64,000 bases of DNA from Octopus sinensis (GCF_006345805.1 NC_043000.1:43090001-43154000); one strand, 5' to 3'. Numbered from the stretch's first letter, positions 2,079 through 53,003 are shown. Made by a program: numbers and translations. Notes: a model not told the origin generated them from the letters alone.

Positions 2079-2309
2079 TTTTTACTCTTTTACTCTCTTA
2101 CTTGTTTCAGTCATTTGACTGCGGCCATGCTGGAGCACCGCCTTTAGTCGAGCAAATCGACCCCGGGACTTATTCTTTGTAAGCCCAGTACTTATTCTAT
2201 CGATCTGATTTGCCGAACCGCTAAGTAACGGGGACGTAAACACACCAGCATCGGTTGTCAAGCAATGCTAGGGGGACAAACACAGACTCACAAACATATA
2301 CACACACAG

Positions 2310-2343
<34 letters not shown>

Positions 2344-2492
2344 CATATATACGACAGGCTTCTTTCAGTTTCCGTCTACCAAATCCACTCACAAGGCATT
2401 GGTCGGCCCGGGGCTATAGCAGAAGACACTTGCCCAAGGTGCCACGCAGTGGGACTGAACCCGGAACCATGTGGTTGGTTAGCAAGCTACTT
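2079..2492 (-). mobile_element. SINE family 'A' body and tail (CORE-type tRNA-derived SINE, octopus OR-like), split from its head by Tx1-like element A
   Basis: Reverse complement reads AAGTAGCTTGCTAACCAACCACATGGTTCCGGGTTCAGTCCC...GGCACCTTGGGCAAGTG (CORE-like), then an internal (TA)n(TG)n, then tail CCAGCATGGCCGCAGTCAAATGACTGAAACAAGT. Colinear with the intact copy at 36452-36865. Confidence 0.9.
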
Positions 2493-2806
2493 TATTTCAA
2501 AACATTTGCCATAAAGGCAGTACACAGATTAAGTTAGCTTTGCGGGCTGGACGAGGACATTAATGAAGTGAATGATAATGAAAGAAAGATGATAAGGATG
2601 GGAGAAGACAAAAAGCGCCCGCCGACTTTCGCTTCTCTAAAACATTGTTCTTTTTAAAGATAAACACAAAACGAGGTATTAAACCTCTTACAATTTTTCC
2701 AATTTTTGGACTTAGCAGTCCATTATTACAAAACGAGGTATTAAACCTCTTACAATTTTTCAATTTTGGACTTAGCAGTCCATTACTAATAATAACAGTT
2801 CAATAA

Positions 2807-3235
2807 TTACATATCGTCCTCGAAATAGCTTGTGCCCGCGCCCTCCACCATCAACCACGCCTCCCTCAGAACGTAATCAAGTTCCGAGTTTGCGTCGCCC
2901 GGGACCAAGTTATAATCTTCATTGAGCTCCTTTAGCCCAAGCGTCACGTCGAACGCCACGGCCTCCACAGCTACCTGCGGAGGCCATTCGGGGTTCTGTG
3001 TGAAGGCTAAAGGTGCTCCCTTGTGGTGCTCTTCCATCACCTTTTCAATTTCGCCTCCTCTATAGAAGAGGACCAATACGTTCAGTTCTTTCGTTGGCGG
3101 CACAGTTCCCGCCAACGGTATTCCTTCTCTTGTCGGTGGCACAACCCCAACCGACGTAGTTCCGGGACATTCCGCTGCTATGTCACTGACAGCCGGCAAT
3201 GTCCCGTTTTTCTTCCTCTTTTTCTTTTTTTCCCT
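2807..3235 (-). pseudogene. Probable frameshifted C-terminal part of element A ORF1
   Basis: Open frame (track 2807..3322) overlapping the ORF1 end at an A-rich tract near 3210-3235; it stops 8 codons before the conserved TAATG motif. Confidence 0.55.
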
Positions 3236-4046
3236 TTTCAACTGAGGGAGGGTGCGTCTCCTCCGTGGCCGGAAGATTCGCCTTCCTCTCCTCATCCCTA
3301 TTATCCTTTGGTGAGCACCCATTGTTGCTCACCTTCCTCTTTCGGCCTCTGTTTGAGGAGTCCTCTGCTTTCTCGGCCGTTATCATTCCCTCTTCTAGAG
3401 GGGTTTTACTTAACTGTTCCGGGATCCTATTTTGTTCCCGGGGACAGTTCTTCTTTATGTGGCCGGACTCCAAGCACCGATGACACTTAGGGGGGCGACC
3501 CTCAAGCATCACCGGGTACCTGCACCCGGCCATTTTAAAAAAATCTGGAAGAACCAGATTGGCTGATTGGGTCCACAGGGTCAAAATTGCTTTTGACCCA
3601 ACCCAAGCAGCCACAGGAAGAACTTTTACGTTAAGGAGCTTAGTTTCGCTGCCACCCAGACCCCGGCGGATAGTCTCCTCTATCCACTCGGGTTCTATGT
3701 CGGGTGGCAGCCCGCAGATCCAAGCTTTCATCAATTTCTTTTTTTTGTACGTGGGCAGGAATAAGATTTCCTTACCCTCCAGGGGTTTGCTAGCAAATTT
3801 GCAAGCCTCTTCAGGGGTGTCAAATAGCAACCACACCGTTGCATATTTGACACCCCTGGAAATGAATTTAATTGTTGGCAAATACTCTTCCAACTCCTTT
3901 TCAATTGCCGTCTTTTCGAATAGGGCGATGGTGTCGAGTGCCTTGGAGTAGGTTCTCAACACCACCGTCCTATCTTCACGGTCTTTTAACCACTTTTTAG
4001 GTGGTATGATTTCCCACTCCAAAATTTTGTTATTTTTCATTGCCAT
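3183..4046 (-). CDS. ORF1p (gag-like nucleic-acid chaperone, CX2CX4HX4C zinc knuckle) of element A
   Basis: Contains EGRPPKCHRCLESGHIKKNCP. First ATG is at 4046 (MAMKNNK; the track starts at TTG 4085). N-terminal half aligns with element B ORF1 (EDRTVVLRTY..FEKTAIEKEL vs EKRTVVFKTF..FEKSTIEKCL). Confidence 0.85.
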   Translation of the reverse strand: MAMKNNKILEWEIIPPKKWLKDREDRTVVLRTYSKALDTIALFEKTAIEKELEEYLPTIKFISRGVKYATVWLLFDTPEEACKFASKPLEGKEILFLPTYKKKKLMKAWICGLPPDIEPEWIEETIRRGLGGSETKLLNVKVLPVAAWVGSKAILTLWTQSANLVLPDFFKMAGCRYPVMLEGRPPKCHRCLESGHIKKNCPREQNRIPEQLSKTPLEEGMITAEKAEDSSNRGRKRKVSNNGCSPKDNRDEERKANLPATEETHPPSVEKGKKEKEEEKRDIAGCQ

Positions 4047-4743
4047 GTTTTTTTTTAATATATTCAAATTAAACTCAAAAAGCAAGAAGAAAAAAGTTCA
4101 AAAGTCCAAATGAAATTTGATAGATTTTTGAAAAAACAAAAAGGAGAAAGCACAACAGAAGGGAAGAAATCAACGGAAAGTCGCAATAAAGAAAAAAACA
4201 AAAGGGGGGGTTAAATGAAGTTCAAAAGAAATTTAATAAACAGAAAAACACAGCAAAAATATTCTGGCCTTGCGGTACTCCCGGCCTGGGTTGAACCTGG
4301 AACGCCGCAACTGCAACACAACCTCCACAAAAATGGGTCCGAAAGGTAATCCAATAGTGGCTTATTTTTATAATTTTCTTGCGAAGTACTCTGACAAGGG
4401 AATAAATTCAACAAACCCAAACACAGCACTGGCTACCGCCAACGGTAATTTTAACAGTAACTGTATTGAATTCCGAGGATACGCCCCTCCACTGTTTTTT
4501 CTTTTTTTTTTTCAATGAACACAAAAACGGCAGCCGCCGAGAGCAGGCGAAATTGTCTCAGAGTTGGACACAACTTACTGAAATAATAATTGGCACGCAA
4601 TAAATTATGCCCAACTCACAATAAACAAAATCACTTACCTCGACAACTTGCCGTTTTTGGTCTTTTTTCTTTAATTGGACGGAGCTGGTTGACTCGCGTC
4701 CACTCTGGCTGAACAGGAAGCAACTGACTAACTGCGCATGTGC

Positions 4744-4780
4744 GTTAGCAAGCTACTTACCACACAGCCACTCCTGTGCC
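4744..4780 (-). mobile_element. SINE-A 5' head upstream of element A (A box TGGCTGTGTGG)
   Basis: Reverse complement is GGCACAGGAGTGGCTGTGTGGTAAGTAGCTTGCTAAC. Confidence 0.9.
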
Positions 4781-5409
4781 TAAGTAACATTAAAAAAAAA
4801 ATTAATTTTAAAAGAAAAACATATTTATCTTAGATTCAATGACAGAAAAAAGCATGTAGAATTTCATTGGTCTCATGCAACAAAAATTTGTATCAAAAGT
4901 TGCGAAGTAAAATATCATGAAAATAATATAAGGCAAAAAATTGGATTTAAGTATAATTACCTTATTTTATATTTTAAAGACAAACTGTATTTTAATTAAG
5001 TTTAAATGATAGAGCTGAAGTCGAAGAATTTCATGGCATAAATCTCATGCAATGAAATTTTAAAAGAAAAAAGTTATTAGCGTTTGTTTCTCAACAACTA
5101 TATTTTTTAAATATAGTTCTACAAGGGGACTTTTAATATATCTATCTCACCAGCGTCATTGAGGTATGGGAATAATTATCAACGACACCGGTAATTGACA
5201 CATTTGACACATCACATTATCAATTAACATAATAGCATAGCCTGGGAAAATCACGAATTACATGGAAAGATGCGAGCAAGAGAAATAATATTCTTAAGAT
5301 TATAAACCTGGAAAATTACAGGACAAGTTATTACACTTGGAAAAGTTCAGGACAACTTATTACATCTGGTAAAGTACAGAACAAGAAAAGTTTTCCATGT
5401 AATATAAGG

Positions 5410-6960: not shown

Positions 6961-7776
6961 TCGTCTTTGATCCTATCTATGATGACAACTATAAACTAAT
7001 AGAAGACATAACAAAACGATTTATGTGTCTATACAACTAAGTACAGAGTCCAAATAAAACAAAGCGCATATCATATTCAATCAGTCGTTTTAAATCTGCT
7101 GTAGTCACGTATTGATTTTGTTTAGACTTGGCACAACTCCAAGATTTGTGGGTGCAATTTGTTTTGGCTTGGTACAAGTCCAATATTAATAAGAAAGAAA
7201 TTTATATGAATTAATTCTACTTTATTACTCGTACTTACTTCATACTTTGTCGTCATAAAAGGTTTTTGAATTGAAATACAGATTGATACAACTAAACGCA
7301 TAAAGCCTTACAAAAACCATTTAACTTTAATAGCATTCCACCACATCTGCCTTCTCAATGACGATACAAGGATGCTATATGTAGTCGTTCGAGGTGTTAA
7401 AAATAGCAACTAAATCTTCCTCAAATCACGTCCTACTGTCTGAAAAATGGATGACTGCTTTGGATAATATAATCTGAGTGAAAAGAATAGTAGAATTAAC
7501 ACTTTTTCGACAATTATTGATTAACAGATCTGCTCAGTCAGCGTCGATTTGGGATTAAACCATAACTTATTCACTAAAATGATAACCTATATAGACTATG
7601 TTGTCAATTGAAATGCATGAAATAATAACCAATTTCTCATAAATTAGACTCTATTTTTGACCAGAATTTTCATAAAGAAATGGCTATTAGACAGCGTAGT
7701 CCTATGCATGCAAGCAAAACGGTTTTGTTACCACAGGAATATTTATGTTCAGAGCAGCCAGGTACAACATAGGGCA

Positions 7777-7780
7777 ACAT

Positions 7781-7813
<33 letters not shown>

Positions 7814-7844
7814 CACCACCACCACCACCACCACCACCACCACC

Positions 7845-7895
<51 letters not shown>
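7777..7895. repeat. Compound (CTA)n-(CCA)n-(CTA)n microsatellite
   Basis: Direct reading. Confidence 0.95.
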
Positions 7896-7897
<2 letters not shown>

Positions 7898-7984
7898 AAA
7901 GTTCAGCTCAAAGTGTTATGACGTGGGATCAAACCAAAATCTCATTATAACGACGCAAATTTTCCCATTCGATTACAATAGCAT

Positions 7985-8017
<33 letters not shown>

Positions 8018-8047
8018 ACACACACACACACAAACTACGATATATAT

Positions 8048-8093
<46 letters not shown>

Positions 8094-8929
8094 AGCGTAG
8101 ATTCGATTAGATTTTCCATTTGATATATGATCAATAACATAAGGAAGATATCTTCACGTAAAATTGAATTAGTAGCAAACAAATAAAATAAGAACATTAG
8201 AAGTCAAATTATCATGTTCGAAATGAAATTAAAGAACATTTACTATTGTCGTATTGTAATGTTACACGCCGAATATAAATTTATATGCGTTTAAACATTA
8301 TTGTTTATTTATGAATAACTTTGCGTAAGAAAATTATTATTTCTGTCGACAAAATTTATTGCTTGCAATAACACGATGAAGTATCGAAAGTTCATTAAAA
8401 TTTGGTCTTCAGATCAAACTTCCTCCTTAATATCAATACTGTCTTCACAGTGAAGTACTAAAACGCTCGCGAGAAGAGAAATATATATGCATTCCTTGAA
8501 GGTAGAATCTAATATATATAGCGTTCATCGAAATTAATTGAATATGAGGAAATGTAGTTAAATGTCAAATGAGGTGAGGTTGATGTACTATAGAATTATT
8601 TAAAACTTTTTTTGTCGTTCGTACTATTGTATACCAGTCAGCACCGAACGAGAAAAGCCTATGACGAAAGGCATTCGAATCGCAGTCATCTTTTCTTTAA
8701 TTATTTTCCCAGACGTAATGCATCTGAGATTGCATTATCCAAGGTGATATTTCCTGTAAATGATGCTATTTATATCCAAAAATAATTTAGGATTTCATTC
8801 TTCAGTATATCTTTTTGACTATTTTAAGGTTGCGGGGTGTAATACGAAATAATTGAACTGCTATTTCTTCTAAGTACTGCGACTACGAAGCGGCTTCTAC
8901 ATTGACTTATCAAAAATAACCTTTTTTTC

Positions 8930-9042
8930 AGTTTCCGTCCACCAAATCCATTCACAACGCTTTGGTCGCCAGTGGACGAGGGAATATAATAGAATACACT
9001 TGCACAAGGTGCCATGCAGGAGTACTGAACCCGGAACCATGT
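8930..9042 (-). mobile_element. SINE-A fragment
   Basis: CAGTTTCCGTCCACCAAATCC...CAAGGTGCCATGCAG..CTGAACCCGGAACCATGTG. Confidence 0.7.
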
Positions 9043-10634
9043 GCTACCATCGAAATATATAGCTGTAAATTATGATGCCTTTTGTTTTGCTTATTTAAGT
9101 AGACTGAAATGAAATCGTGGAAAAAATCACAGAAAAAAAAAGATATAATGACTATAAAAAAAGTGGGTATGAGAATACATTTTCTTCATTTTCTCGCTAA
9201 CTATAATTACTATTGCAAATTAATTATCTTTCAATTAGCGTAGATTAAATTCTATTATTTTCTCGAAAGGTCCTCAAAATATCTTAATCATCTACCTACA
9301 ATAGAAATACATACTCGTAGTCACATTATTGGGTACATTAATTTAAAAAAGAAAATTATTTCGCTATCGCTTTATATATATCTTCTCAATTTGTTTACGG
9401 GTGACAATTATCAGAACGCCTGCTTAATGAATCTTAGAAAGATGAAAATATACAGTGCTTCGACTTTTTACTTTTTTTTTTCCAGGGTCAACATATTAAA
9501 TACCAGTTATTTACCTGGGTGTTTTAATAAAATATATATTGGAAAAGATATGAAAAATTCTATTTTGAAGAGATTGTTATTTTTCCTTCTGCGTCGTTAA
9601 TATTTTTTGTATTTAAAACAGCAAGAGAAGAAATTGTTCTGTTTTTCTTTTATGATTTAAATTTTAGAATTTTCCTTTACCTATGTAATTTACTATACCC
9701 TGGTAATTATTACTCAAGAATAGGACACTTAGAGCACCTTTATAATAGTTGACTAACAATTACTTATACAATGACAATTAATTTCATCCTATGTATTCCC
9801 TGAAACATTGTTTTGAAAGTTTGTTTTGCGATGTCCACGATGTAACATATGGTTACTTACCAGAACTAATGGACTATTTTAAAAACTATTCCATTTATAA
9901 GCCTATAACTTTATTATGAGTAAATGTTATTGCATTTCCCTCTTCTCAACTGAGTGTCATTTTAGACAATTGCATTAATTTAGCAGTTTTCATTATGTTA
10001 CTCTACTTCCATAAGCGTTAAACCAACTTGAAGGGAATTATCATGCCGTTACATTATCTACAAGCTTCGTAAGTCTCTTTTGCAGAGTACGTCGTTTACT
10101 TGTTACGTTCTACATCTATGCACTTTTTATTATATAGAATTGACATTGCGCGTCGATAAAGCAAAACGAAATATATCATCCCGTATGTTGAATCAGAAAA
10201 TTACTCTAATACTGAACGTGATGATCCGACGTGGTTTAGCAGAAACATCGTTCGAGCCAGTACCTACGGGATTAAGCAAGCCTGATCAATAATGACGTAA
10301 TGTGAACCAGTAACGAAATAATACAGCAGAAAGTCTCCGGTTGTGATTCAATACTCAGGTGATTTTCTTACAGTTGCACTGTTTTTATTACAAAACGGAA
10401 ATTTGTAGAAGCGAAGTTTAGTGTATTCAGAAAAGTTTTAGTGGTTCTAAAACTGTCAGCAAGACATTTCTTCACCATTTGAATACTGTCTACATCGACT
10501 CACGAATATACCCTGTAGGCAAATCCAGATGGATAATCTTCGTGGAATGAGGCGCTTTGAATTTACTTAAAGGATAGAAGTTGCTTCAATAGATACTTTT
10601 TGCGTCAATGTTCATCCTAACCTGCTTGGATTTT

Positions 10635-11990
10635 GTTAAATATAATCATTTTACGTATATTGCACAACCAATGTACAACGATTGTCCCATAACTGTAGAA
10701 ACACTACTTCTGTAGTGAAGTTTCTTTTCGATTATAAGAAGGTAGGCCATATGACATCGTTCATTGGATCCAAAGTATTTTGTACTACTCACCAAAAACA
10801 ATAGTCAGATAGGCAGTACTGATCATTTGAAAGTTACTTCAAACGGTGCATTTCGTTGGGAAAAAATGTCACCAGTGTCATTTCCCCGATTAAAGCAGTT
10901 CTGAAGATTAGTCAAAAGAAATGAACTAATTTTACGATATTTTTTAGACTATTCCGTTTATACATTATTTTCGCCGGTATGAAAGAAAAGGTGGAGTGAA
11001 TCTTCTAACTTCTTTTCAGAATGCTTTTTCATGCGGCCTTGTTAAGCAAGTCGCTATCACATAATTTTCATTGAAGCTTAAAACTAATTTACGAGAATCA
11101 ATCATAAAGTAATGCAATTTTTATTTGAATGATTTTTTGATTGATACTATCCTGTTTGCGAGGATTAATCAAATAGCAATGCAATTAAAAAATGCATTAC
11201 TTTCTAACCCACCTTCGTACATACTAGCTTTACCATCCCATAGAAATAGGAATAGGAATAGAGTAGTAAGTTATTTATCGGCTAACTTCGCGGTCACATG
11301 GGAATAGAATAGCAATTTCTGGGTTGATATAGTGAATGACTCATTCAAAACAAAGATCAACTGATGAAAATTTCTCCCTGAGCTGAAGTTAAAAAATGAG
11401 GTTGACGCGCAAACAATTTTCAGTGACTTTCAGAGAAGCAGGGAAGATAATTTATCATTTCTCTGGAAGTTATTTCAATTACATTTCAAATTTTGCGTAA
11501 TTCATCTCTTAACTCTTCTAAGTTCATGTCATTTAGCTTCTTGACAGTTATATACTTTAGTTATATACTATCGATAACATGTTGCATTCAATATTCGTCC
11601 CTACACAGATTTTAATACATAGAATTGGCATTATATATCGATAATAAACTCTAGGTACTATACCAAAGTAGCCTTTGCGTTTTCCTTTGGGTGTGGGTAG
11701 AAAAGATGCAGGGATGGACAAAATAATTGATAGATTAGGTAAGGAGAATATAAGAACAAAAAGTTATGCAGGCATTGCTCAGAGACAAATAAAAAGTTAA
11801 ATATAACCATTTTACTTATATTGCACAATGTACGACGATTGTCCCAAAAACAATAGAAACACTACTTCTGTAGTGAAGTGCCTTTTCGATTATAAGAAGA
11901 TAGGCCATATGATCGCTTACGGATCCAAAGTAGTTTGTAATACTCACCAAAAGTCAGATAGTCAGTACTGATCATTTGAAAGTTGCCTCC
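10635..11990. repeat. Pair of diverged ~200-bp direct repeats (10635-10840 and 11796-11990)
   Basis: Shared blocks TAGAAACACTACTTCTGTAGTGAAGT, TTTCGATTATAAGAAG, GGATCCAAAGTA, CAGTACTGATCATTTGAAAGTT; offset 1161 bp. Confidence 0.85.
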
Positions 11991-12699: not shown

Positions 12700-13933
12700 C
12701 TCTTTGAGATAAACATTTGCATTTCATAGAGGGACTTTGAAATACAAAAGTTCATCTCACCAAAAGTGGAAATCAGTACACTTGAACACAGCTTGAGATT
12801 CAACAGGAAATTCATAGAAAAACTATAATATACAAATGTGATGGATTGAAACTGAGATGATTTCAAGCGAGCAACTCTGATTCAGCTTAAACCAGTCAGG
12901 GACTTAAGAACCTATGTAGTTTGGGGAAGGTTTGAAACAGTGGAGATAAGAATTCAAACCGGAGAAAAAGTGAAGAACATTTCAATAACAACGCTTAAAA
13001 GTGACAAGCTGCTTCTAATTCAAATAAACTACTATACTACTAATCCGGCCGGAGAGCGGTAGAAATAAAAGTAAGCGAGGTACCACAAAAATAGATACCC
13101 TCTTCCTTGTGGAGTCCGAAATATATGATATCGAAAATGAAACAAGTATTCTGAAATTCCATAAACTTGAGAAAAAAATTTGGTCAGGCACAGAAATGGT
13201 ACTATTAATCCAAAATGATCAAGAACGCATATAAGTGATTCTTGATTTGTTCAGCCTCACAAAATAGTTTTTAGCATTTCGTAATAGTTGAAGCAGAAGA
13301 CCGAGTTGCTATATATGTGAGGACGCAAACATTTAAGAGGTTTCTGTCCATATGACAAACAAAAAAAAAAATTGGAATACCCCTATCTGCAGCTGATGAC
13401 TCCATCATAACAGCAACACCGGTAACAAAAGTAGTAGCATTCCCCCTAACGACAGAAGCAAGAGCAGCAACAACAATACCAGCAATAGCAGTACCAAACA
13501 GAACAACAAAAATCACATTCAACATCAGAAGCAAACACTAATTCCATTACCTGAGAAGAAATATATCCTGCAACACAACACAGAAATGCCCTACTCACAC
13601 CAGTCAACCAAATTTCAAACATAAATACAAACATACTCAATTTTGCAGATATATCTCTTTTCTTACCACAGATTTCTCTTACAGCGAAAACTCATTTTGA
13701 GAAGAAACGAGTTTGAACGACTCGACAGAAATGGATGCTTGTCAAGGGGAAGACAGAAACTAGAATATATTAATACACTACGTCATACAAAAATGAACAG
13801 ATGAGATAAAGCTACACATAATTTGACAATCACACACACCTCCAAAACCTACACAACCACAAACATATCCACCTCTAGAAACACCACAAAACATTACAAA
13901 AGTCACAATAAACGAAAACAACACAATGAACGC

Positions 13934-27752: not shown

Positions 27753-28279
27753 CCCTGATGCAATACCAGGCAGTGGCTCTCTTGGCTTCTAACTGATTGG
27801 AAGTGTTATCGTGTACATTGTTTTGTCTTGGTATAAAAATGGGCTACAGCAAATATTCTGCTCAATGCCACAGAGATGCTTGTCAGCTGTTTGACCTTAA
27901 CCAGCAGAGCATTTCCCTTGGTAGCTGGCAATATGTGCATTTCTGATCATGAGCAGAAGTAGTGGGGGAGCATCATAGCCATATGTTCAGAAGAATTCTT
28001 TGGGGTTTAGATAATTCAGCTCTGGAAACATGGGTGTTTCTTTCAACATCCTCAAACAACCCTTATTCAGGTACCTTTTCACCAGGATGGGATACTCGAC
28101 CTGAAGAAAATTCGAACTAGGCCTCATCTGCAAGGTCAGGTGCTGTTTATCTTGATACGAGATCAGCATGTCGCGCTCATATAGTTGTGATGCATTGCCT
28201 GGTATACACTTATCAGATGGGTAAGTCATGATGGCTATACCGGGCTTCGTATATTTTAACCCAGTGTCACTCAATGATA
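27751..28279. mobile_element. Unclassified ~530-bp interspersed-repeat-like element flanked by (AAT)n on both sides
   Basis: Complex, GC-richer segment set sharply between two (AAT)n tracts; no credible ORF. Confidence 0.5.
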
Positions 28280-28291
28280 GCAATAATAATA

Positions 28292-28353
<62 letters not shown>

Positions 28354-28354
<1 letters not shown>

Positions 28355-28890
28355 GTAACCATTCTGTGGGACTTTCCAGTACATACAGACCGAACCATCA
28401 AGGCCAATAAACCAGATATTGTTGTGAAAGACCAAAACAATAAAGTTTGCTTATTGATCGACATGAGCATCCCCTGTGATCATAATATCTCAGCGAAAGA
28501 GTTTGACAAGCTCAGAAAATATAAAGACCTACTCATTGAAATTGAGAAAATGTGGCATCTCAAGGCGGTTACAATACCAGTGATCGTAGGAGCACTAGGA
28601 ATGATCAAGAAGGGAACCGAAAATTATATGAGAATGATCCCTGGCTTACCATCCCTGCAAGAAGTGCAAAAGATTGTCTTAATTGGTACATCACACGTAT
28701 TGAGAAGAGCATTGTCGATGTGAGAACTGTTGCTGCTCATGTATTTTAATTTAACTTAAAAAAAAAAAAAAAATTAACGAACTATTGAGTTTGGTTTAAT
28801 GGCCTACCAATGTATACTATGAGTTTCTTTGCCCTAGGAGTCGGGAAGACACTCGGCAAGAAATGGAAGCAAATTTGAAAGAAGAAAAAA
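28354..28890 (+). mobile_element. 5'-truncated R4/Dong-like non-LTR retrotransposon (restriction-like endonuclease C-terminus and 3' UTR) in (AAT)n
   Basis: ILWDFPVHTDRTIKANKPDIVVKD..CLLIDMSIP..EFDKLRKYKDL..MW..PVIVGALG carries the RLE PD..D motif; stop at 28723; (AAT)n on both sides. Confidence 0.85.
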
Positions 28891-36346: not shown

Positions 36347-36451
36347 GGGTACACACATACATACATACATACATATATATATATATATAGATAGATAGAT
36401 ATATGGGCACACACATACATACATATATATATATGGGTACATACACATACA

Positions 36452-36865
36452 TACTCTTACTCTTTTACTCTTTTACTTGTTTCAGTCATTTGACTGCGGC
36501 CATGCTGGAGCACCGCCTTTACTCGAGCAACTCGACCCCGGGACTTATTCTTTGTAAGCCCAGTACTTATTCTATCGGTCTGTTTTGCCGAACCGCTAAG
36601 TGACGGGGACATAAACACACCAGCATCGGTTGTCAAGCAATGCCAGGGGGACAGACGCACAGACACACACAGATACACATACATACATATATATACATAT
36701 ATACGACGGGCTTCTTTCAGTTTCCGTCTACCAAATCCACTCACAAGGCTTTGGTCGGCCCGAGGCTATAGTAGAAGACACTTGCCCAAGGTGCCACGGA
36801 GTGGGACTGAACCCGGAACCATGTGGTTTGTAAACAAGCTACTTACCACACAGCCACTCCTGCGT
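36452..36865 (-). mobile_element. SINE-A, intact, empty target site (variant AAGTAGCTTGTTTAC)
   Basis: Uninterrupted head, body, microsatellite and tail; serves as the reference for the split copies. Confidence 0.92.
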
Positions 36866-48278: not shown

Positions 48279-48314
48279 GCGCAGGAGTGGCTGTGTGGTA
48301 AGTAGCTTGCTAAC
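48279..48314 (+). mobile_element. SINE-A 5' head upstream of element B
   Basis: GCGCAGGAGTGGCTGTGTGGTAAGTAGCTTGCTAAC. Confidence 0.9.
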
Positions 48315-48795
48315 CTCACTGACAGAAGAGTGACTTTGCCTACCGTACTACGGTTTGGACGCGTTTTCTTCCCGGTAAGAGTTTTGCTGTGTTGTTAATT
48401 GTTGAATTCCTACTACTGAAAATTTGCCTTTAAACGTTGCTGATCTGTCTTGTTATCCGGTTTTACCGGGAAATAATTGAATAATTTCTTACCGTTGAAC
48501 TGTTAGCCACTGTGGCTTTTTATTTACGTGACTATACATAGTCCTGCCAGACTATTTTCGTGCCCCTCCCCCGAATGCGGGTAGGAATTGGAATTTTTGA
48601 ACTGCTTTTTTGAACTACTTTGGAAGAAAAACTTTCTATAGGTTTCCCAGTTTTGTGGGAAACCAATACTTGTAATTTTTGTGTTGTCTAATTTCAACAG
48701 AATAATATCTGTTGAAATTATTCACGAAAGTAGTGCTCTTGAGGAGAGCAATGTTAAAAAATTTTCTGAGGTAGCCGCAGTGGCTACCGAGAAAA

Positions 48796-49710
48796 TTGAC
48801 ATCGATGTCAACCAGCTCGTCGAGCTATTTAAAAAAAATGCAAGAGGAGGGTGGTGATGTTAAAATATCACCCTCCGCCAGTATCGTGGAGACCGAGAAG
48901 CGGACCGTAGTGTTTAAAACTTTCTGTCCACAAAGCAGAAGGTTCAAACACTTTGAAAAAAGTACCATCGAGAAATGCCTGTCCCCGATTTGGAAGGACA
49001 TCGTGTACGTCGCCAGGGGACGGGCATATGGCACTGTGGATGTCCGCTTCTCGGGGGAAGAAATGGCCCGCGGGCATTCTGTAAACCCCCTAAAAACCAA
49101 GGAGGTGGTACTTTTTCCAAGCTATAGGGGACGCAGGTCGTCCCGGGTCAGGATTGTAGAAGCCCCGCCGGAAGTAGATCCGGTAGAGGTAGTGGCTGCC
49201 CTATTATATAAAAGGGCGGACAAAATAAAAATACTAGAAGTAACATGCTCTACCCCTCGATTTTGGCTCGGGCGTAACATTAATATATTAATTCAAGGAA
49301 CAGCGGAGGACCTACAGCTCCTTCCTGAGAGGGTGCTCGTGGGCGAGAACGTAGCCCTCAGGGTACAGGTCGAAGGCCGAAAACCCACCTGTTACGCCTG
49401 CGGCAAAAAGGGCTACATTCGTGTAGACTATCCAGACAAGCAAAAGAAACCGCAGACACCAGGCCCCTCAGATAATAAAAAAGTCCCTACCCTTGCAAAC
49501 ACACCTACTCCTACAAAAAAATCCCACTCCTGCTGTTACGGTGCCACCCCAAAACAGACTGAAGAAAAAAACCCAGCCCTCGCACTCACAAACCCCTACA
49601 CTATTAAAACCTCCCACCCACCTAAAAACTGCGGCGCCTACCGAACAAACTATTGCTACCCCAGACGATACCATGGAGGTATCAGAGGGGGGATTTACAC
49701 CAGTTCGTAA
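48796..49710 (+). CDS. ORF1p of element B (degenerate zinc knuckle, frameshifted ends)
   Basis: VEGRKPTCYACGKKGYIRVDYP is CX2CX4HX4C with H>Y and C>Y; homologous to element A ORF1. C-terminal part continues in other frames to about 50102. Confidence 0.8.
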   Translation: MTSMSTSSSSYLKKMQEEGGDVKISPSASIVETEKRTVVFKTFCPQSRRFKHFEKSTIEKCLSPIWKDIVYVARGRAYGTVDVRFSGEEMARGHSVNPLKTKEVVLFPSYRGRRSSRVRIVEAPPEVDPVEVVAALLYKRADKIKILEVTCSTPRFWLGRNINILIQGTAEDLQLLPERVLVGENVALRVQVEGRKPTCYACGKKGYIRVDYPDKQKKPQTPGPSDNKKVPTLANTPTPTKKSHSCCYGATPKQTEEKNPALALTNPYTIKTSHPPKNCGAYRTNYCYPRRYHGGIRGGIYTSS

Positions 49711-50119
49711 AAGAATTCGTGCAGCATCCCCGTCCACATCCCCTACAAAAAATAATAAAAACAAAGACACACCACAGACACGGAAAAAAAATCCCGTTCA
49801 ACTGGCCCAGAAAAAGAAGACAAGAAAGAAAATGAACTCATATTAATTGAATTCGACACACAAGACAAATACATAAACGATATTGTGGTTCAGCATCAGT
49901 CAGCAAGACTGTACAACAAATACAAAATCGAAATAGACACGCGTGGATTGCGGAAACAACGTTCAAACAATTAAAAGACAGACACCCAAACGCCATCCGG
50001 CATGTCGCGAAATTGCCGGACTATCTGAAGAAAGAGGAGAAAGAAGGGGCCCACAAACGTGTGGTGAGGTCGGCCCCCACCTCTCCAACGAAATGTAAGT
50101 AGAACTTTTACTTTTTGTA

Positions 50120-51943
50120 ATGGCTTCGCTTAACCTTGGTTGTTTAAATGTGCGTGGTCTGAGTTCGAAGTGGAAGCAGGCTTGTTTCCTCGACGACCTC
50201 AGATCACATGATATACATGTGATGGTTGCTACAGAGACCAAGCTGGACAGCCTACAAACCTTCTCGCCTCTCCTGAATGGCTACGAGAAAATCATGTCTC
50301 CTGGCCAGACCGGAGGGCGAGGGGGCGTAGTGGTACTGATCCGTAAAGACTTGGCTCTACAGACAAGTACAGTCTATGTAGACCCAGAAGGTGGGCTGGT
50401 CGTCCTTGATATGACATACAGCAGTAAGGCCTTCAGGTTGATCGGACTCTATGCACCTTGTGCTAGAGGTTTCCAAACTGATTTTTATCGGCGCCTAGAG
50501 GGCTTTCTCGTGACGTCGAAGACTTTAGTGATATTAGGGGACTTTAATGCTATCGTTGACGTACACATCGATAGCGTTGGCTCGATCTATAGGAAAGTGA
50601 ACTCACGTCTCGTGGATCTGCTTAAGCGGTTTCAGCTAGCAGATCGTTTCAGACTTGACCATCCGAACGTCCCAGAGTGGACCTGGATGAGTGGCGACGG
50701 AAGATTCAAGTCTTATCTAGACAGGATAGTGATAAGAACTAGAGATAAGTCTAGTTTTAGTTGTCCACAGCTCGTCCAGGTGCCCTATACTGACCATAGA
50801 ATGGTCACGTGTAGACTGGACATAGATAGCACACTTAAGATAGGAACCGGCTACTGGAAGCTGAACAAGTCTATTTTGACACGCGAGGCATACGGTAGCC
50901 GGATTAAGGTGTTAGTGCAGAGGGCGTTAACCGGAGCCGTGGTTAATAACCGGTGGTGCTTCACCCTCAAAAGAGCCATTCGATTCGAGTCCATTAGATT
51001 TAGTAAACAACTAAGACTAGATAGGGCTAGAATAGAAGGGCAACTAGTTAAGAACTTAGAGGAGGCGTTGAGGTTGGGCTCTGCATCTCACATTTTAGCG
51101 GCGAGAACGGCATTAGACCGTCACCTCAAAACCAAACATGAGGGATGTAGAGTCCGGGCTAAAGTACGAGCATTGGGCCGTGAGGGAATTAATGTTGCCG
51201 GATGGGCCCGTACGATAGAAACACAGCGTGGAAACGATGCCACAATTGGGTCTCTTGTTGATGAAAACGGATGCACGATCAAGAAGCGGGACGAGATGTG
51301 TGAGGCACTTCACAAGCACTTCGCCGAGTTGTTCGGGAGGTGCGGGACGCTGGATCATGGTGAGGCCCTTAGGGACTTCCTGTCTGGTGGCCCGCGCCTC
51401 TCGACACGAGAGACTGAGTGCTGTGAAGGGCCAATCACAGCCGAGGAAGTAATCGAGGTAATGGGCAAGTGCCCCGGGGAGAAGTCGCTGGGTCTCGATG
51501 GTCTGCCCTATGAATTTTATAGAAGTATGCCAGACTTGTTCGGGCACCTGCTGGCTAGCGTCTACGCCAACTGGCAGCAGAATGGGAGAATTCCCAAGTC
51601 TGCGAGCCGGGGGGCGGTGACGTTGATCAGGAAGGACCCGAACAAGGGGGACGAGATAGGGAACTTCAGGCCCATAACTCTGTTAAACACAGAGTTAAAG
51701 ATTCTGGCCAAGGTGCTAGCAAAAAGGTCGGCGCGGGTCGTAGACAAACTTGTCGGGGAAGCGCAATCGTGCGCTATCCCCGGCAGAACGATCCACGACA
51801 ATCTCCACCTTATACGCTACTCCTTAGAGAGGGTGGGGAAGCTTTCTGGCGCAGGGGGAGCACTGGTACATTTAGACCAGTCCAAGCATTTGATAGGGTC
51901 GACCATCGGTACCTGGCGGTGGTCCTCGGAGAGGCTGGCCTAG
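50120..51943 (+). CDS. ORF2p of element B: APE-like endonuclease and N-terminal reverse transcriptase (pseudogenised)
   Basis: EN motifs LNVRGL, TETK, YAP, GDFN, YLDRI, TDH; RT motifs GLDGLPYEFY, FRPITLLN..KILAK, LDQSK/AFDRVDH (1-bp frameshift near 51889). Truncated before the catalytic YADD-type motif. Confidence 0.93.
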   Translation: MASLNLGCLNVRGLSSKWKQACFLDDLRSHDIHVMVATETKLDSLQTFSPLLNGYEKIMSPGQTGGRGGVVVLIRKDLALQTSTVYVDPEGGLVVLDMTYSSKAFRLIGLYAPCARGFQTDFYRRLEGFLVTSKTLVILGDFNAIVDVHIDSVGSIYRKVNSRLVDLLKRFQLADRFRLDHPNVPEWTWMSGDGRFKSYLDRIVIRTRDKSSFSCPQLVQVPYTDHRMVTCRLDIDSTLKIGTGYWKLNKSILTREAYGSRIKVLVQRALTGAVVNNRWCFTLKRAIRFESIRFSKQLRLDRARIEGQLVKNLEEALRLGSASHILAARTALDRHLKTKHEGCRVRAKVRALGREGINVAGWARTIETQRGNDATIGSLVDENGCTIKKRDEMCEALHKHFAELFGRCGTLDHGEALRDFLSGGPRLSTRETECCEGPITAEEVIEVMGKCPGEKSLGLDGLPYEFYRSMPDLFGHLLASVYANWQQNGRIPKSASRGAVTLIRKDPNKGDEIGNFRPITLLNTELKILAKVLAKRSARVVDKLVGEAQSCAIPGRTIHDNLHLIRYSLERVGKLSGAGGALVHLDQSKHLIGSTIGTWRWSSERLA

Positions 51944-52002
51944 GCCCGACCTTTCGAGGTTGGATCGCTGCTTTGTATAGCGACATCGAGTCTGTAGTCA
52001 AA

Positions 52003-52086
52003 GTCTTCTGCTATAGCTACGGGCCGACCAATGCCTTGTGAGTGGATTTGGTAGACGGAAACTGAAAGAAGCCTGTCGTATATATG

Positions 52087-52146
<60 letters not shown>

Positions 52147-52328
52147 TATGTGTGTGTGTGTGTGGTGTCTGTATGTTTGTGTTTGTCCCCCTAGCATTGC
52201 TTGACAACCGATGCTGGCGTGTTTACGTCCCCGTCACTTAGCGGTTCGGCAAAAGAGACCGATGGAATAAGTACAGGACTTACAAAGAATAAGTTCCGGG
52301 GTCGATTTGCTCGACTAAAGACGGTGCA
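52003..52328 (+). mobile_element. SINE-A body downstream of element B
   Basis: GTCTTCTGCTATAGC..GGCCGACCAATGCCTTGTGAGTGGATTTGG, internal TA/TG tract, partial tail. Confidence 0.9.
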
Positions 52329-52429: not shown

Positions 52430-53003
52430 TTTCTACTATAAATTTGGAGGAGGGGGGCCAGTCGATTAGATCAACCCCAGTACACAAATGGCACCTAATT
52501 TATCGACACTGAAAGGATGAAAGAAAAAGTCGACCCCGGCAGAATGTGAACTCAGAACGTAATGACGGATGAAATACCTATTTCTTTACTACCCACAAGG
52601 GGCTAAACACAGAGAGGACAAACAAGGACAGACAAATGGATAAAGTCGATTATATCGACCCCAGTGCGTAACTGGTACTTATTTAGTCGACCTCGAAAGG
52701 ATGAAAGGCAAAGTCGACCTCGGCGGAATTTGAACTCAGAACGTAAAGACAGACGAAATACCTATTTCTTTTTTATTTCTTTACTACCCACAAGGGGCTA
52801 AACACAGAGAGGACAAACAAGGACAGACAAACAGATTAAGTGGATTACATTGACCTCAGTGCGTAACTGGTACATAATTTATCGACCCCGAAATGATGAA
52901 AGGCAAAGTCGACCTCGGTGGACTTTGAACTCTGAACGTAACGGCAGACGAAATACCGCTAAGCATTTCGTCCAACGCGCTGACGATTCTTCCAGCTCAC
53001 CGT
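52430..53003 (-). mobile_element. Head-to-tail SINE-B trimer
   Basis: Three GGATGAAAG..GTCGAC..GAACTCAGAACGTAA units; two identical junctions GAAATACC|TATTTCTTT. Confidence 0.85.

What the first reader, a model, noticed from the sequence alone, without database searches (positions are those of the whole stretch)
48279..52328. SINE-targeting Tx1-like retrotransposon lineage: two divergent elements inserted at the same site of the same SINE
Seen: element B starts directly after the SINE-A head GCGCAGGAGTGGCTGTGTGGT-AAGTAGCTTGCTAAC (48300-48314; one further C is ambiguous) and the SINE body resumes after it. Element A, 44 kb away on the opposite strand, starts after the identical 15-mer, which there is a perfect TSD. 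A and B ORF1 proteins align only in short blocks while their SINE flanks are nearly identical, so these are independent insertions and not a duplication. The site lies between the SINE A box (TGGCTGTGTGG) and B box (GGTTCAGTCCC), so insertion should disable the SINE promoter. Established: the Tx1 clade contains target-specific families (Tx1L in a Xenopus DNA transposon, Keno in U2 snRNA, Mutsu in 5S rDNA, Dewa at tRNA arrays, Kibi/Koshi in microsatellites). Inference: this is a lineage using an abundant tRNA-derived SINE as its safe-harbour target. I do not know of a described cephalopod case, but I cannot search.
Basis: partly seen in the sequence, partly recalled or inferred. Interest (0 to 1): 0.92.

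Follow-up and report, generated by a model that had tools for sequence, protein, structure and literature searches.

The report
LINE lineage that targets an octopus SINE
Two very different jumping genes of the LINE-1/Tx1 type sit at exactly the same nucleotide of two separate copies of an abundant octopus short repeat (SINE), and two more relatives from the Octopus sinensis genome start at that same spot, so this looks like a retrotransposon lineage that deliberately lands inside another mobile element: a new target for a known kind of behaviour.

Summary
Element A (2493-4743, minus strand) is flanked by a perfect 15-bp duplication, AAGTAGCTTGCTAAC. Removing A restores an intact SINE. Element B (48315-~52004) starts after the same 15-mer in another SINE copy of the same subfamily.

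- A has only ORF1, with no endonuclease or reverse transcriptase.
- B is cut inside its reverse transcriptase, and the SINE resumes 50 nt late, with its B box deleted. B therefore has no 3' junction or duplication.

A and B ORF1 proteins are homologous but only 27% identical, and their outer flanks are unrelated, so these are independent insertions.

As a test, two A-like copies were retrieved from Octopus sinensis by protein homology alone. Both begin after a SINE head at the same position, making 4 of 4. Neither has a SINE body downstream.

A and one of these copies diverged under purifying selection (dN/dS 0.23). B ORF2 is collinear with human LINE-1 ORF2p. Placement in Tx1 rather than L1 could not be tested.

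Best reading: site-specific integration into the SINE head, between its A and B boxes (confidence about 0.7). This is a new member, with a new target, of the known target-specific L1/Tx1 retrotransposons. A genome-wide count is still needed.

The parts
48279..48314 (+). SINE head (SINE positions ~2-37) immediately upstream of element B. A-box-like TGGCTGTGTGG at 48288-48298; the 15-mer AAGTAGCTTGCTAAC at 48300-48314.
48315..52004 (+). Element B, a dead autonomous L1/Tx1-type LINE. 5'UTR 48315-48837. ORF1 48838-49710, with a frameshifted continuation to ~50100. ORF2 50120-51943, comprising an APE endonuclease with catalytic residues present and the N-terminal part of the reverse transcriptase. 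A frameshift near 51885 is followed by the RT motif-3 region, running to ~52004. RT motifs 4-7, including YxDD, and the whole 3' end are missing.
52003..52327 (+). SINE body resuming at SINE position 88 and running to ~381. Positions 38-87, including the B box, are absent. 2-3 nt of microhomology (GT/GTC) at the junction with B.
4744..4781 (-). SINE head upstream of element A. A-box-like motif at 4760-4770; 5' copy of the 15-bp target-site duplication at 4744-4758.
2493..4743 (-). Element A, 2251 bp, an ORF1-only non-autonomous relative of B. 5'UTR 4047-4743. ORF1 3183-4046 (open, with a CCHC knuckle). C-terminal ORF1 domain in another frame at 2807-3322. 3'UTR 2493-2806, containing two tandem ~62-bp units (2666-2790) and ending ...TTGAAATA(AAG). 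No poly(A).
2478..2492 (-). 3' copy of the 15-bp target-site duplication AAGTAGCTTGCTAAC. Its first 3 nt (AAG) could equally belong to the element's 3' terminus.
2085..2477 (-). Rest of the SINE that hosts A (positions 38-~431). B-box-like GGTTCAGTCCC at 2451-2461; internal (TA)n(TG)n microsatellite.

Best explanation
A and B belong to an old, diversified lineage of L1/Tx1-type non-LTR retrotransposons that integrates site-specifically into the head of an abundant octopus SINE. Integration is always in the SINE's orientation, with the element's 5' end joined after SINE position 37 (GCTNNC|).

Proposed mechanism:
1. The ORF2 apurinic-type endonuclease nicks the bottom strand of the SINE head at about 5'-AGCTACTT^ACCACAC-3'.
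2. The freed 3' end primes reverse transcription on the element RNA, whose terminal ...AAUAAAG can pair with CTT.
3. The top strand is cut 15 bp (or 12 bp) downstream, after GCTAAC, which gives the 15-bp duplication seen around A.
4. The insert separates the SINE's A box from its B box and brings T-runs within 50-114 nt. That SINE copy can therefore no longer make a full Pol III transcript.

B is a dead autonomous copy. It later lost its 3' half and 50 nt of SINE in a deletion. A is an ORF1-only derivative and must be moved in trans by an autonomous relative with the same specificity.

Shown here: the junction positions, the duplication, the orientation, the homology and divergence of the elements, and selection on ORF1. 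Inferred: the exact nick sites, endonuclease sequence specificity as the cause, trans-mobilisation, and loss of SINE transcription.
For: Junctions around A:
- A has a perfect 15-bp duplication, and the reconstructed empty site is a colinear SINE.

B in a second SINE copy:
- B starts after the same nucleotide of a different SINE copy, in the same orientation.
- SINE body of the same subfamily lies downstream of B.

Independence of the insertions:
- A and B ORF1 are homologous but only 27% identical.
- Their outer flanks are unrelated.

The independent test:
- The only two ORF1 relatives in a 5.8-billion-protein collection lie in Octopus sinensis.
- Both are preceded by a SINE head ending at the same position. 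That makes 4 of 4.
- With roughly one SINE head per 10 kb, a random insertion hits that nucleotide and orientation with a probability of about 5e-5.

Heads come from the target:
- Heads are 72-79% identical between copies, as between unrelated SINE copies.
- The adjoining 100 nt of 5'UTR are only 38-56% identical. The heads are therefore target-derived, not inherited with the element.

Age of the lineage:
- dN/dS is 0.23 and dS 0.95 between the ORF1s of A and L001, so the lineages diverged while active.

Type of element:
- B ORF2 has an APE endonuclease and reverse transcriptase, colinear with human L1 ORF2p residues 10-597 at E 6.6e-35, with the endonuclease catalytic residues present.

Precedent:
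- Tx1-clade families are known to target other transposons (PMC4494074).
Against: - Only one element (A) has both junctions intact.
- B, L001 and L002 all lack a proper 3' junction. B is cut in its reverse transcriptase, L001 is cut in ORF1, and L002 has no SINE body within 25 kb downstream. This is unusual for LINEs, which are normally truncated at the 5' end.
- No genome-wide count was possible.
- The sample is four copies, and the window itself was chosen because of A and B.
- The four interrupted heads carry AAC or TCC at positions 35-37, whereas 5 of 7 intact copies carry TAC. This is unexplained.
- Endonuclease specificity is inferred, not measured.
- A related ORF2 family from another organism (L005/L006) shows no shared flanks.
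Confidence: 0.7

Rival explanations
1. The SINE head is not the target but is added to the element. In one version the reverse transcriptase, on reaching the 5' end of the LINE RNA, jumps onto a 5' fragment of SINE RNA that ends in the anticodon-loop equivalent, like a tRNA half. In the other version the head is carried in a read-through transcript. Either way, head plus element would then land anywhere.
For: L001 and L002 have a head upstream but no SINE body downstream. Some crocodilian Tx1 families carry U1- or U2-derived heads attributed to template switching (PMC4494074). All four heads are complete to the SINE 5' end.
Against: - It cannot explain A's perfect 15-bp duplication followed by the rest of the same SINE.
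- It cannot explain the same-subfamily SINE body after B.
- A head inherited with the element should have diverged as much as the neighbouring 5'UTR, but it has not.
- No head-head duplication is seen in any copy.
- L001 is visibly truncated inside the element, so its missing 3' flank says little.
Confidence: 0.12
2. Integration is specific for the SINE head, but the position is set by tethering to the Pol III machinery (TFIIIC/TFIIIB) bound to the A and B boxes. This would resemble Dictyostelium TRE elements or yeast Ty3 (stated from general knowledge). DNA sequence recognition by the endonuclease would not be the cause.
For: The site lies midway between A-box-like and B-box-like motifs with tRNA-like spacing. 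Head sequences around the junction differ between copies (AAC or TCC; AAGTAGC or AAGAAGT) while the position stays the same.
Against: Nucleotide-exact junctions and a fixed duplication are typical of sequence-specific APE-type LINEs, including Tx1L, whose endonuclease is reported to be site-specific (cited in PMC4494074). Known tethered elements insert outside the transcribed region, at a distance that varies. Most SINE copies are probably not bound by Pol III factors.
Confidence: 0.1
3. Chance nesting. SINEs are so dense in this genome that unrelated LINE insertions happen to fall in them.
For: SINEs make up about 4% of this window and 11.6% of the O. vulgaris genome (PMC13282606).
Against: All four elements have the same nucleotide position and the same orientation, including two that were found by protein homology only. 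The chance is about 5e-5 per insertion.
Confidence: 0.02
4. A and B, and the O. sinensis copies, descend from one ancestral insertion that was later copied as DNA together with its SINE.
For: The hosts of A and B belong to the same SINE subfamily and share the GCTAAC variant.
Against: ORF1 identity is 27% while SINE identity is 92-96%. Sequence outside the SINE is unrelated right up to its 5' end. dN/dS of 0.23 shows evolution as active elements, not as decaying duplicates.
Confidence: 0.01

Closest known systems
Tx1L of Xenopus laevis and the crocodilian Tx1-Mar families (Tx1 clade, L1 group)
   Same: APE-type LINEs with two ORFs that insert at fixed positions inside another family of transposable elements. 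Tx1L inserts in the piggyBac-type Tx1D and Tx1-Mar in Mariner-N4_AMi. Other crocodilian Tx1 families insert in LTR or Harbinger elements (PMC4494074). Here too there is a fixed position, a fixed orientation and a constant duplication inside a repeat.
   Different: The target here is a SINE, that is, a Pol III retroposon that itself depends on LINE machinery. The site is inside its promoter region. Clade membership by RT phylogeny was not tested. No SINE-targeting LINE was found in the literature searches.
Keno (U2 snRNA genes), Mutsu (5S rRNA genes), Dewa (spacer of tRNA-Leu repeats)
   Same: Tx-group LINEs specific for multicopy small-RNA genes or their arrays (PMC3706591; PMC4494074).
   Different: Those targets are host genes or their spacers. 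Here the target is a selfish tRNA-like retroposon, and the insertion lies inside the tRNA-like part.
HAL1 (half-L1) elements of mammals
   Same: Non-autonomous LINE derivatives that keep ORF1 and lack ORF2 (cited in PMC4494074). A, and apparently the O. sinensis copies, keep ORF1 only, and ORF1 evolved under purifying selection.
   Different: A belongs to a site-specific lineage and has a CCHC-knuckle ORF1, not the mammalian Transposase_22 type. Whether the three copies share one ancestral ORF2 deletion is not shown.
R1/R2 elements of rDNA
   Same: They are the model for LINEs that live in a multicopy 'safe harbour' and inactivate the copy they enter.
   Different: R2 uses a restriction-like endonuclease and an HDV-like ribozyme. 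No ribozyme was detected here, and B's endonuclease is APE-type.
Dada DNA transposons
   Same: They insert inside tRNA and snRNA genes at fixed positions (PMC3706591).
   Different: They are DNA transposons, with an unrelated enzyme and mechanism.

Membership tests
L1 group of non-LTR retrotransposons (L1 + Tx1 clades) | ORF2 with an N-terminal apurinic-type endonuclease followed by a reverse transcriptase, colinear with L1 ORF2p | tested here: met
   Pfam Exo_endo_phos E 2.2e-12 and RVT_1 E 7.6e-5. phmmer against human L1 ORF2p gives E 6.6e-35, with residues 6-583 aligning to 10-597. The catalytic N, E, D/N, D and H of the endonuclease are aligned. The RT is incomplete (no motifs 4-7).
Tx1 clade | RT domain clusters with Tx1 references rather than L1 in a phylogeny (or in RTclass1) | not testable with these tools
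   No named Tx1 reference sequences could be obtained. The supplement of PMC4494074 is not held. The only indirect hint is that the recently active LINEs listed for O. vulgaris include L1-Tx1 and no other L1-type class (PMC13282606).
Tx1 clade | ORF1 of Type I kind (RRM plus CCHC zinc knuckle) | tested here: inconclusive
   CCHC knuckle in A ORF1 at E 0.0055, below Pfam's cut-off. The ORF1 profile hits only CCHC knuckles in the PDB. B's knuckle is degenerate (Y in place of H). No RRM was found by Pfam. The AlphaFold model has pLDDT 36 and is unusable. Type I variants in animals are said to be consistent with Tx1 (PMC5203782).
Tx1 clade | C-terminal zinc-binding region after the RT | not testable with these tools
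   B is truncated before this region. A 36%-identical relative (L003) has zf-RVT.
Target-specific LINE | Independent copies share the same upstream target sequence at the 5' junction | tested here: met
   A, B, L001 and L002 all follow SINE position 37 in the SINE's orientation. The sample is four copies.
Target-specific LINE | Independent copies share the same downstream target sequence and a constant target-site duplication | tested here: inconclusive
   Met in A only (15-bp duplication). B has SINE downstream, but after a deletion. L001 and L002 have none.
tRNA-derived SINE (SINE2), for the host repeat | Head with Pol III A and B boxes at tRNA-like spacing | tested here: met
   TGGCTGTGTGG at positions 11-21 and GGTTCAGTCCC at 54-64, with box starts 43 nt apart. 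The comparison with the box consensus sequences is from general knowledge.
tRNA-derived SINE (SINE2), for the host repeat | Head recognisable as a tRNA | tested here: not met
   ARAGORN finds no tRNA in the window. Rfam finds no tRNA match even at E up to 10 on an intact copy.
ORF1-only non-autonomous LINE (HAL1-like), for element A | ORF1 retained and ORF2 absent, in several copies that evolved as elements | tested here: met
   No endonuclease or RT similarity within A or next to the L001 and L002 copies. dN/dS 0.23. Whether the copies share one deletion is unknown, because their 3' parts differ.

The most novel reading that the evidence does not exclude
Octopus genomes harbour an ancient, diversified clade of L1/Tx1-type retrotransposons, with autonomous and ORF1-only members. 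Its dedicated integration site is the anticodon-loop equivalent of an abundant SINE. This would be the first LINE lineage whose safe harbour is a SINE. It would be a parasite of a parasite: it splits the SINE's Pol III promoter each time it lands, and it has kept this target across lineages as far apart as 27% ORF1 identity.
Probability: 0.4. Interest if true: 0.6.

Novelty: new member of a known kind. Interest (0 to 1): 0.5.

Why it matters
Target-specific LINEs show how a retrotransposon endonuclease can be aimed at one sequence, and they are being explored as tools for site-directed gene insertion. A lineage aimed at a SINE would add a target class with hundreds of thousands of neutral landing sites.

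It would also give a natural case of one retroelement inactivating copies of another. That bears on how the very large SINE load of octopus genomes is shaped. The ORF1-only relatives under purifying selection would offer a second system, besides mammalian HAL1, for asking what ORF1 alone contributes to mobility.

For annotation, it explains a recurrent 'SINE head + LINE' chimera that repeat pipelines would otherwise build into false consensus sequences.

Tried and rejected
Searches for more copies:
ORF1 of A alone and an A/B/P0001 profile both found only two O. sinensis proteins. B ORF2 found one 57%-identical fragment on a 1.4-kb contig and three relatives at 36-38%.
- The SINE-head 21-mer has no match in JGI metagenome contigs.
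- A degenerate search with B ORF2 plus P0003 found only distant RTs.

Relatives from other organisms:
- L003, L005 and L006 contain no octopus SINE.
- L005 and L006 share no flanks.

RNA features:
- No HDV-like or other ribozyme, and no tRNA, by Rfam or ARAGORN in the 5'UTRs or the SINE head.

Structure and classification:
- The structure prediction of ORF1 failed (pLDDT 36), so no fold search was run.
- Tx1 reference sequences for a phylogeny were not available.

Flank analysis:
- A search for duplications flanking head-plus-element in L001 and L002 gave only one 9-mer, compatible with chance.
- An apparent coincidence between B's breakpoint and an RT fragment in L002 dissolved on inspection. 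That fragment starts about 30 residues earlier, right after a SINE tail.
- The SINE fragment at 8923-9043 that lacks a head is not a LINE 3' junction.
- No similarity was found between A's 3'UTR and the SINE tail, so there is no sign that this lineage also mobilises the SINE.
Full report
**What is in the sequence.**

The window is AT-rich (35% G+C). It carries at least seven copies or fragments of one ~430-bp SINE with an internal (TA)n(TG)n microsatellite.

The SINE head has an A-box-like TGGCTGTGTGG at positions 11-21 and a B-box-like GGTTCAGTCCC at positions 54-64. This is tRNA-like spacing. Even so, neither ARAGORN nor Rfam recognises a tRNA in it.

The 15-mer AAGTAGCTTGCTAAC (SINE positions 23-37) occurs exactly three times in the window, where about 0.1 is expected even with two mismatches allowed.

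**Element A (2493-4743, minus strand).**

- A is 2251 bp and lies between two of the three 15-mers.
- Joining the flanks restores a SINE that aligns without a gap across the junction to the other copies. This is a textbook target-site duplication.
- A has a ~700-nt 5'UTR and an open ORF1 (3183-4046) with a CCHC knuckle.
- A further ORF1 domain follows in another frame (2807-3322), after a shift in a lysine/glutamate-rich linker.
- The 315-nt 3'UTR has two tandem ~62-bp units and ends ...TTGAAATA(AAG). There is no poly(A).
- A has no endonuclease or reverse transcriptase.

**Element B (48315-~52004, plus strand).**

- B begins directly after the same 15-mer, which ends a SINE head at 48279-48314.
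- It has a ~520-nt 5'UTR and an ORF1 homologous to that of A: 27% identity over 197 residues, E 3e-21.
- Its ORF2 has an apurinic-type endonuclease and the start of a reverse transcriptase (Pfam).
- ORF2 aligns colinearly with human LINE-1 ORF2p residues 10-597 (E 6.6e-35), and the endonuclease catalytic residues are in place.
- After a frameshift the reading continues through the motif-3 region (...AFDRVDH...SDIESVVKV). It then runs straight into SINE position 88, with 2-3 nt of microhomology.
- B therefore lacks RT motifs 4-7 and its whole 3' end. Its host SINE lacks positions 38-87, including the B box.
- The simplest reading is insertion at the same site as A, followed by a deletion. B has no 3' junction of its own.

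**Independence of A and B.**

The sequences outside the two SINE copies are unrelated. The SINE parts match at 33/35, 82/85 and 141/154 positions, whereas the ORF1 proteins are only 27% identical. One ancestral insertion copied as DNA is excluded.

The two host SINEs do share diagnostic variants (GCTAAC, TTCTGC, CAATGCC, CCTGTCG, CGATTTG), so they belong to one subfamily.

**A test of the targeting idea.**

The only relatives of the ORF1 in the large protein collection were two Octopus sinensis gene models. Their loci were fetched without any reference to the SINE. Both elements begin right after a SINE head:

- L001: ...ggctgtgtggtaagtagcttgcttcc|tgtgcatgcg...
- L002: ...gccgtgtggtaagaagtttgcttcc|actgcgcatgtgcg...

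The three A-like 5' ends are homologous to one another from the junction onward. All four elements therefore share the same junction position and orientation. With about one SINE head per 10 kb, a random insertion does this with a probability of about 5e-5.

Three further points bear on what the heads are:

- The heads are as similar to each other as unrelated SINE copies are (72-79%), while the adjoining 100 nt of 5'UTR are only 38-56% identical. This argues that each head comes from the target and was not inherited with the element.
- The ORF1s of A and L001 differ by dS 0.95 with dN/dS 0.23. These lineages separated long ago and kept coding, that is, they diverged as active elements.
- The upstream flanks of A, L001 and L002 are unrelated.

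**What does not fit neatly.**

- Neither O. sinensis copy has a SINE body downstream. L001 is cut inside the ORF1 C-terminal domain. In L002, homology to A stops at the ORF1 stop codon, and no SINE body follows within 25 kb.
- Counting B, three of the four copies lack their 3' junction. This is odd for LINEs, which are usually truncated at the 5' end.
- The four interrupted heads carry AAC or TCC at positions 35-37, whereas five of seven intact copies carry TAC. This could be a subfamily or nick-site preference, or chance (about 0.05).

These points keep a rival alive. In that rival the head is added by template switching onto a SINE RNA fragment or is carried in a read-through transcript. There is precedent in the crocodilian Tx1 families with U1 or U2 heads (PMC4494074). 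That rival cannot produce A's duplication followed by the rest of the same SINE, nor the SINE body after B. I therefore rank it well below true targeting.

**Mechanism.**

I propose ordinary target-primed reverse transcription with a sequence-specific endonuclease:

1. The bottom strand is nicked at about AGCTACTT^ACCACAC.
2. Reverse transcription is primed on the element's ...AAUAAAG end.
3. The top strand is nicked after GCTAAC.
4. The result is a 15-bp duplication, or 12 bp if the terminal AAG belongs to the element.

The same 9-mer, GAAATAAAG, ends two copies of a distant ORF2 relative from another organism. This hints that it is the true 3' terminus.

The insertion separates the A and B boxes by kilobases and brings T4+ runs within 50-114 nt, so the SINE copy is silenced. 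That last step is inference. No ribozyme that would process a co-transcript was found. A must be moved in trans.

An alternative for how the site is chosen is tethering to Pol III factors. It cannot be excluded without biochemistry.

**Comparison with what is known.**

Target-specific insertion is a hallmark of the Tx1 clade. Known targets are:

- a piggyBac-type element (Tx1L);
- Mariner-N4_AMi, LTR and Harbinger elements (crocodilian Tx1 families);
- U2 and 5S genes, a tRNA-Leu spacer, and microsatellites (PMC4494074; PMC3706591).

O. vulgaris is reported to have 13 recently active L1-Tx1 families, but no target preference is mentioned (PMC13282606). Six full-text literature searches found no LINE described as targeting a SINE, in cephalopods or elsewhere. 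Repbase could not be consulted.

B is an L1-group element by direct test. Tx1 membership proper rests on an RT phylogeny that I could not run, and the Type I ORF1 criterion is only half met (knuckle yes, RRM not shown). A resembles mammalian HAL1 in keeping only ORF1.

**Verdict.**

This is a new member, with a new kind of target, of a known class, not a new class. The evidence is four copies with one complete pair of junctions. A genome-wide flank table would settle the matter in an afternoon.

Noticed in passing
window 2493-4743 (-); L001 5490-6995; L002 11743-13672: The A-type elements encode ORF1 only, like mammalian HAL1. The ORF1s of A and the O. sinensis copy L001 show dN/dS 0.23 at dS 0.95, so an ORF1-only lineage seems to have propagated under selection. 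In all three copies the C-terminal ORF1 domain is reached only after a frame change in a K/E-rich linker, but the direction of the shift differs between copies.
   Followed up: partly
window 2490-2498 (-); L005 ~13745-13755; L006 ~13785-13795: A ends in GAAATAAAG, overlapping its duplication by AAG. The same 9-mer is the 3' terminus of two copies of a 38%-identical ORF2 relative from an unrelated ENA assembly, whose flanks are otherwise unrelated. This may be a conserved 3' terminus that pairs with the nicked target.
   Followed up: partly
window 48309-48314, 4744-4749; L001 5484-5489; L002 ~11737-11742: The interrupted SINE heads carry AAC (A and B) or TCC (L001 and L002) at the three bases before the junction. 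Five of seven uninterrupted SINE copies carry TAC. This may be a subfamily or nick-site preference, or chance.
   Followed up: partly
window 52440-52800 (+); L002 7690-7900 (-): A second short repeat family (core ...GTCGACCYCGGCRGAATKTGAACTCAGAACGTAA...) lies in two adjacent copies right after B's host SINE. It also interrupts an RT fragment in O. sinensis.
   Followed up: no
L002 ~7400-8520 (-): A degenerate L1/Tx1-like reverse-transcriptase fragment starts, at about RT motif 3, directly after the 3' tail of a 5'-truncated SINE (8892-8524). It is not at the head site, so not every related LINE fragment sits in the proposed target.
   Followed up: partly
L001 7503-7916 and 9662-10067: Two direct repeats of ~415 bp at 94% identity lie about 550 bp downstream of the truncated A-like copy. 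They look like the LTRs of an inserted element and may be part of the rearrangement that removed that copy's 3' side.
   Followed up: no
window 28274-28723 (+): An open frame of 149 aa follows a long isoleucine-rich low-complexity run. It has no Pfam match. From memory it resembles the C-terminal piece of a retroelement protein common in invertebrate genomes.
   Followed up: no
window 36400-36456 and the SINE microsatellites: The (TA)n(TG)n tracts give spurious sub-threshold Rfam matches to the mir-297 and mir-3149 families. The tract length differs greatly between SINE copies: about 120 bp in B's host and about 60 bp in A's.
   Followed up: no
window 8923-9043 (-): A SINE fragment starts at about position 43, close to the insertion site, with no head and no LINE sequence upstream. 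It is probably an old truncated or internally deleted copy.
   Followed up: yes
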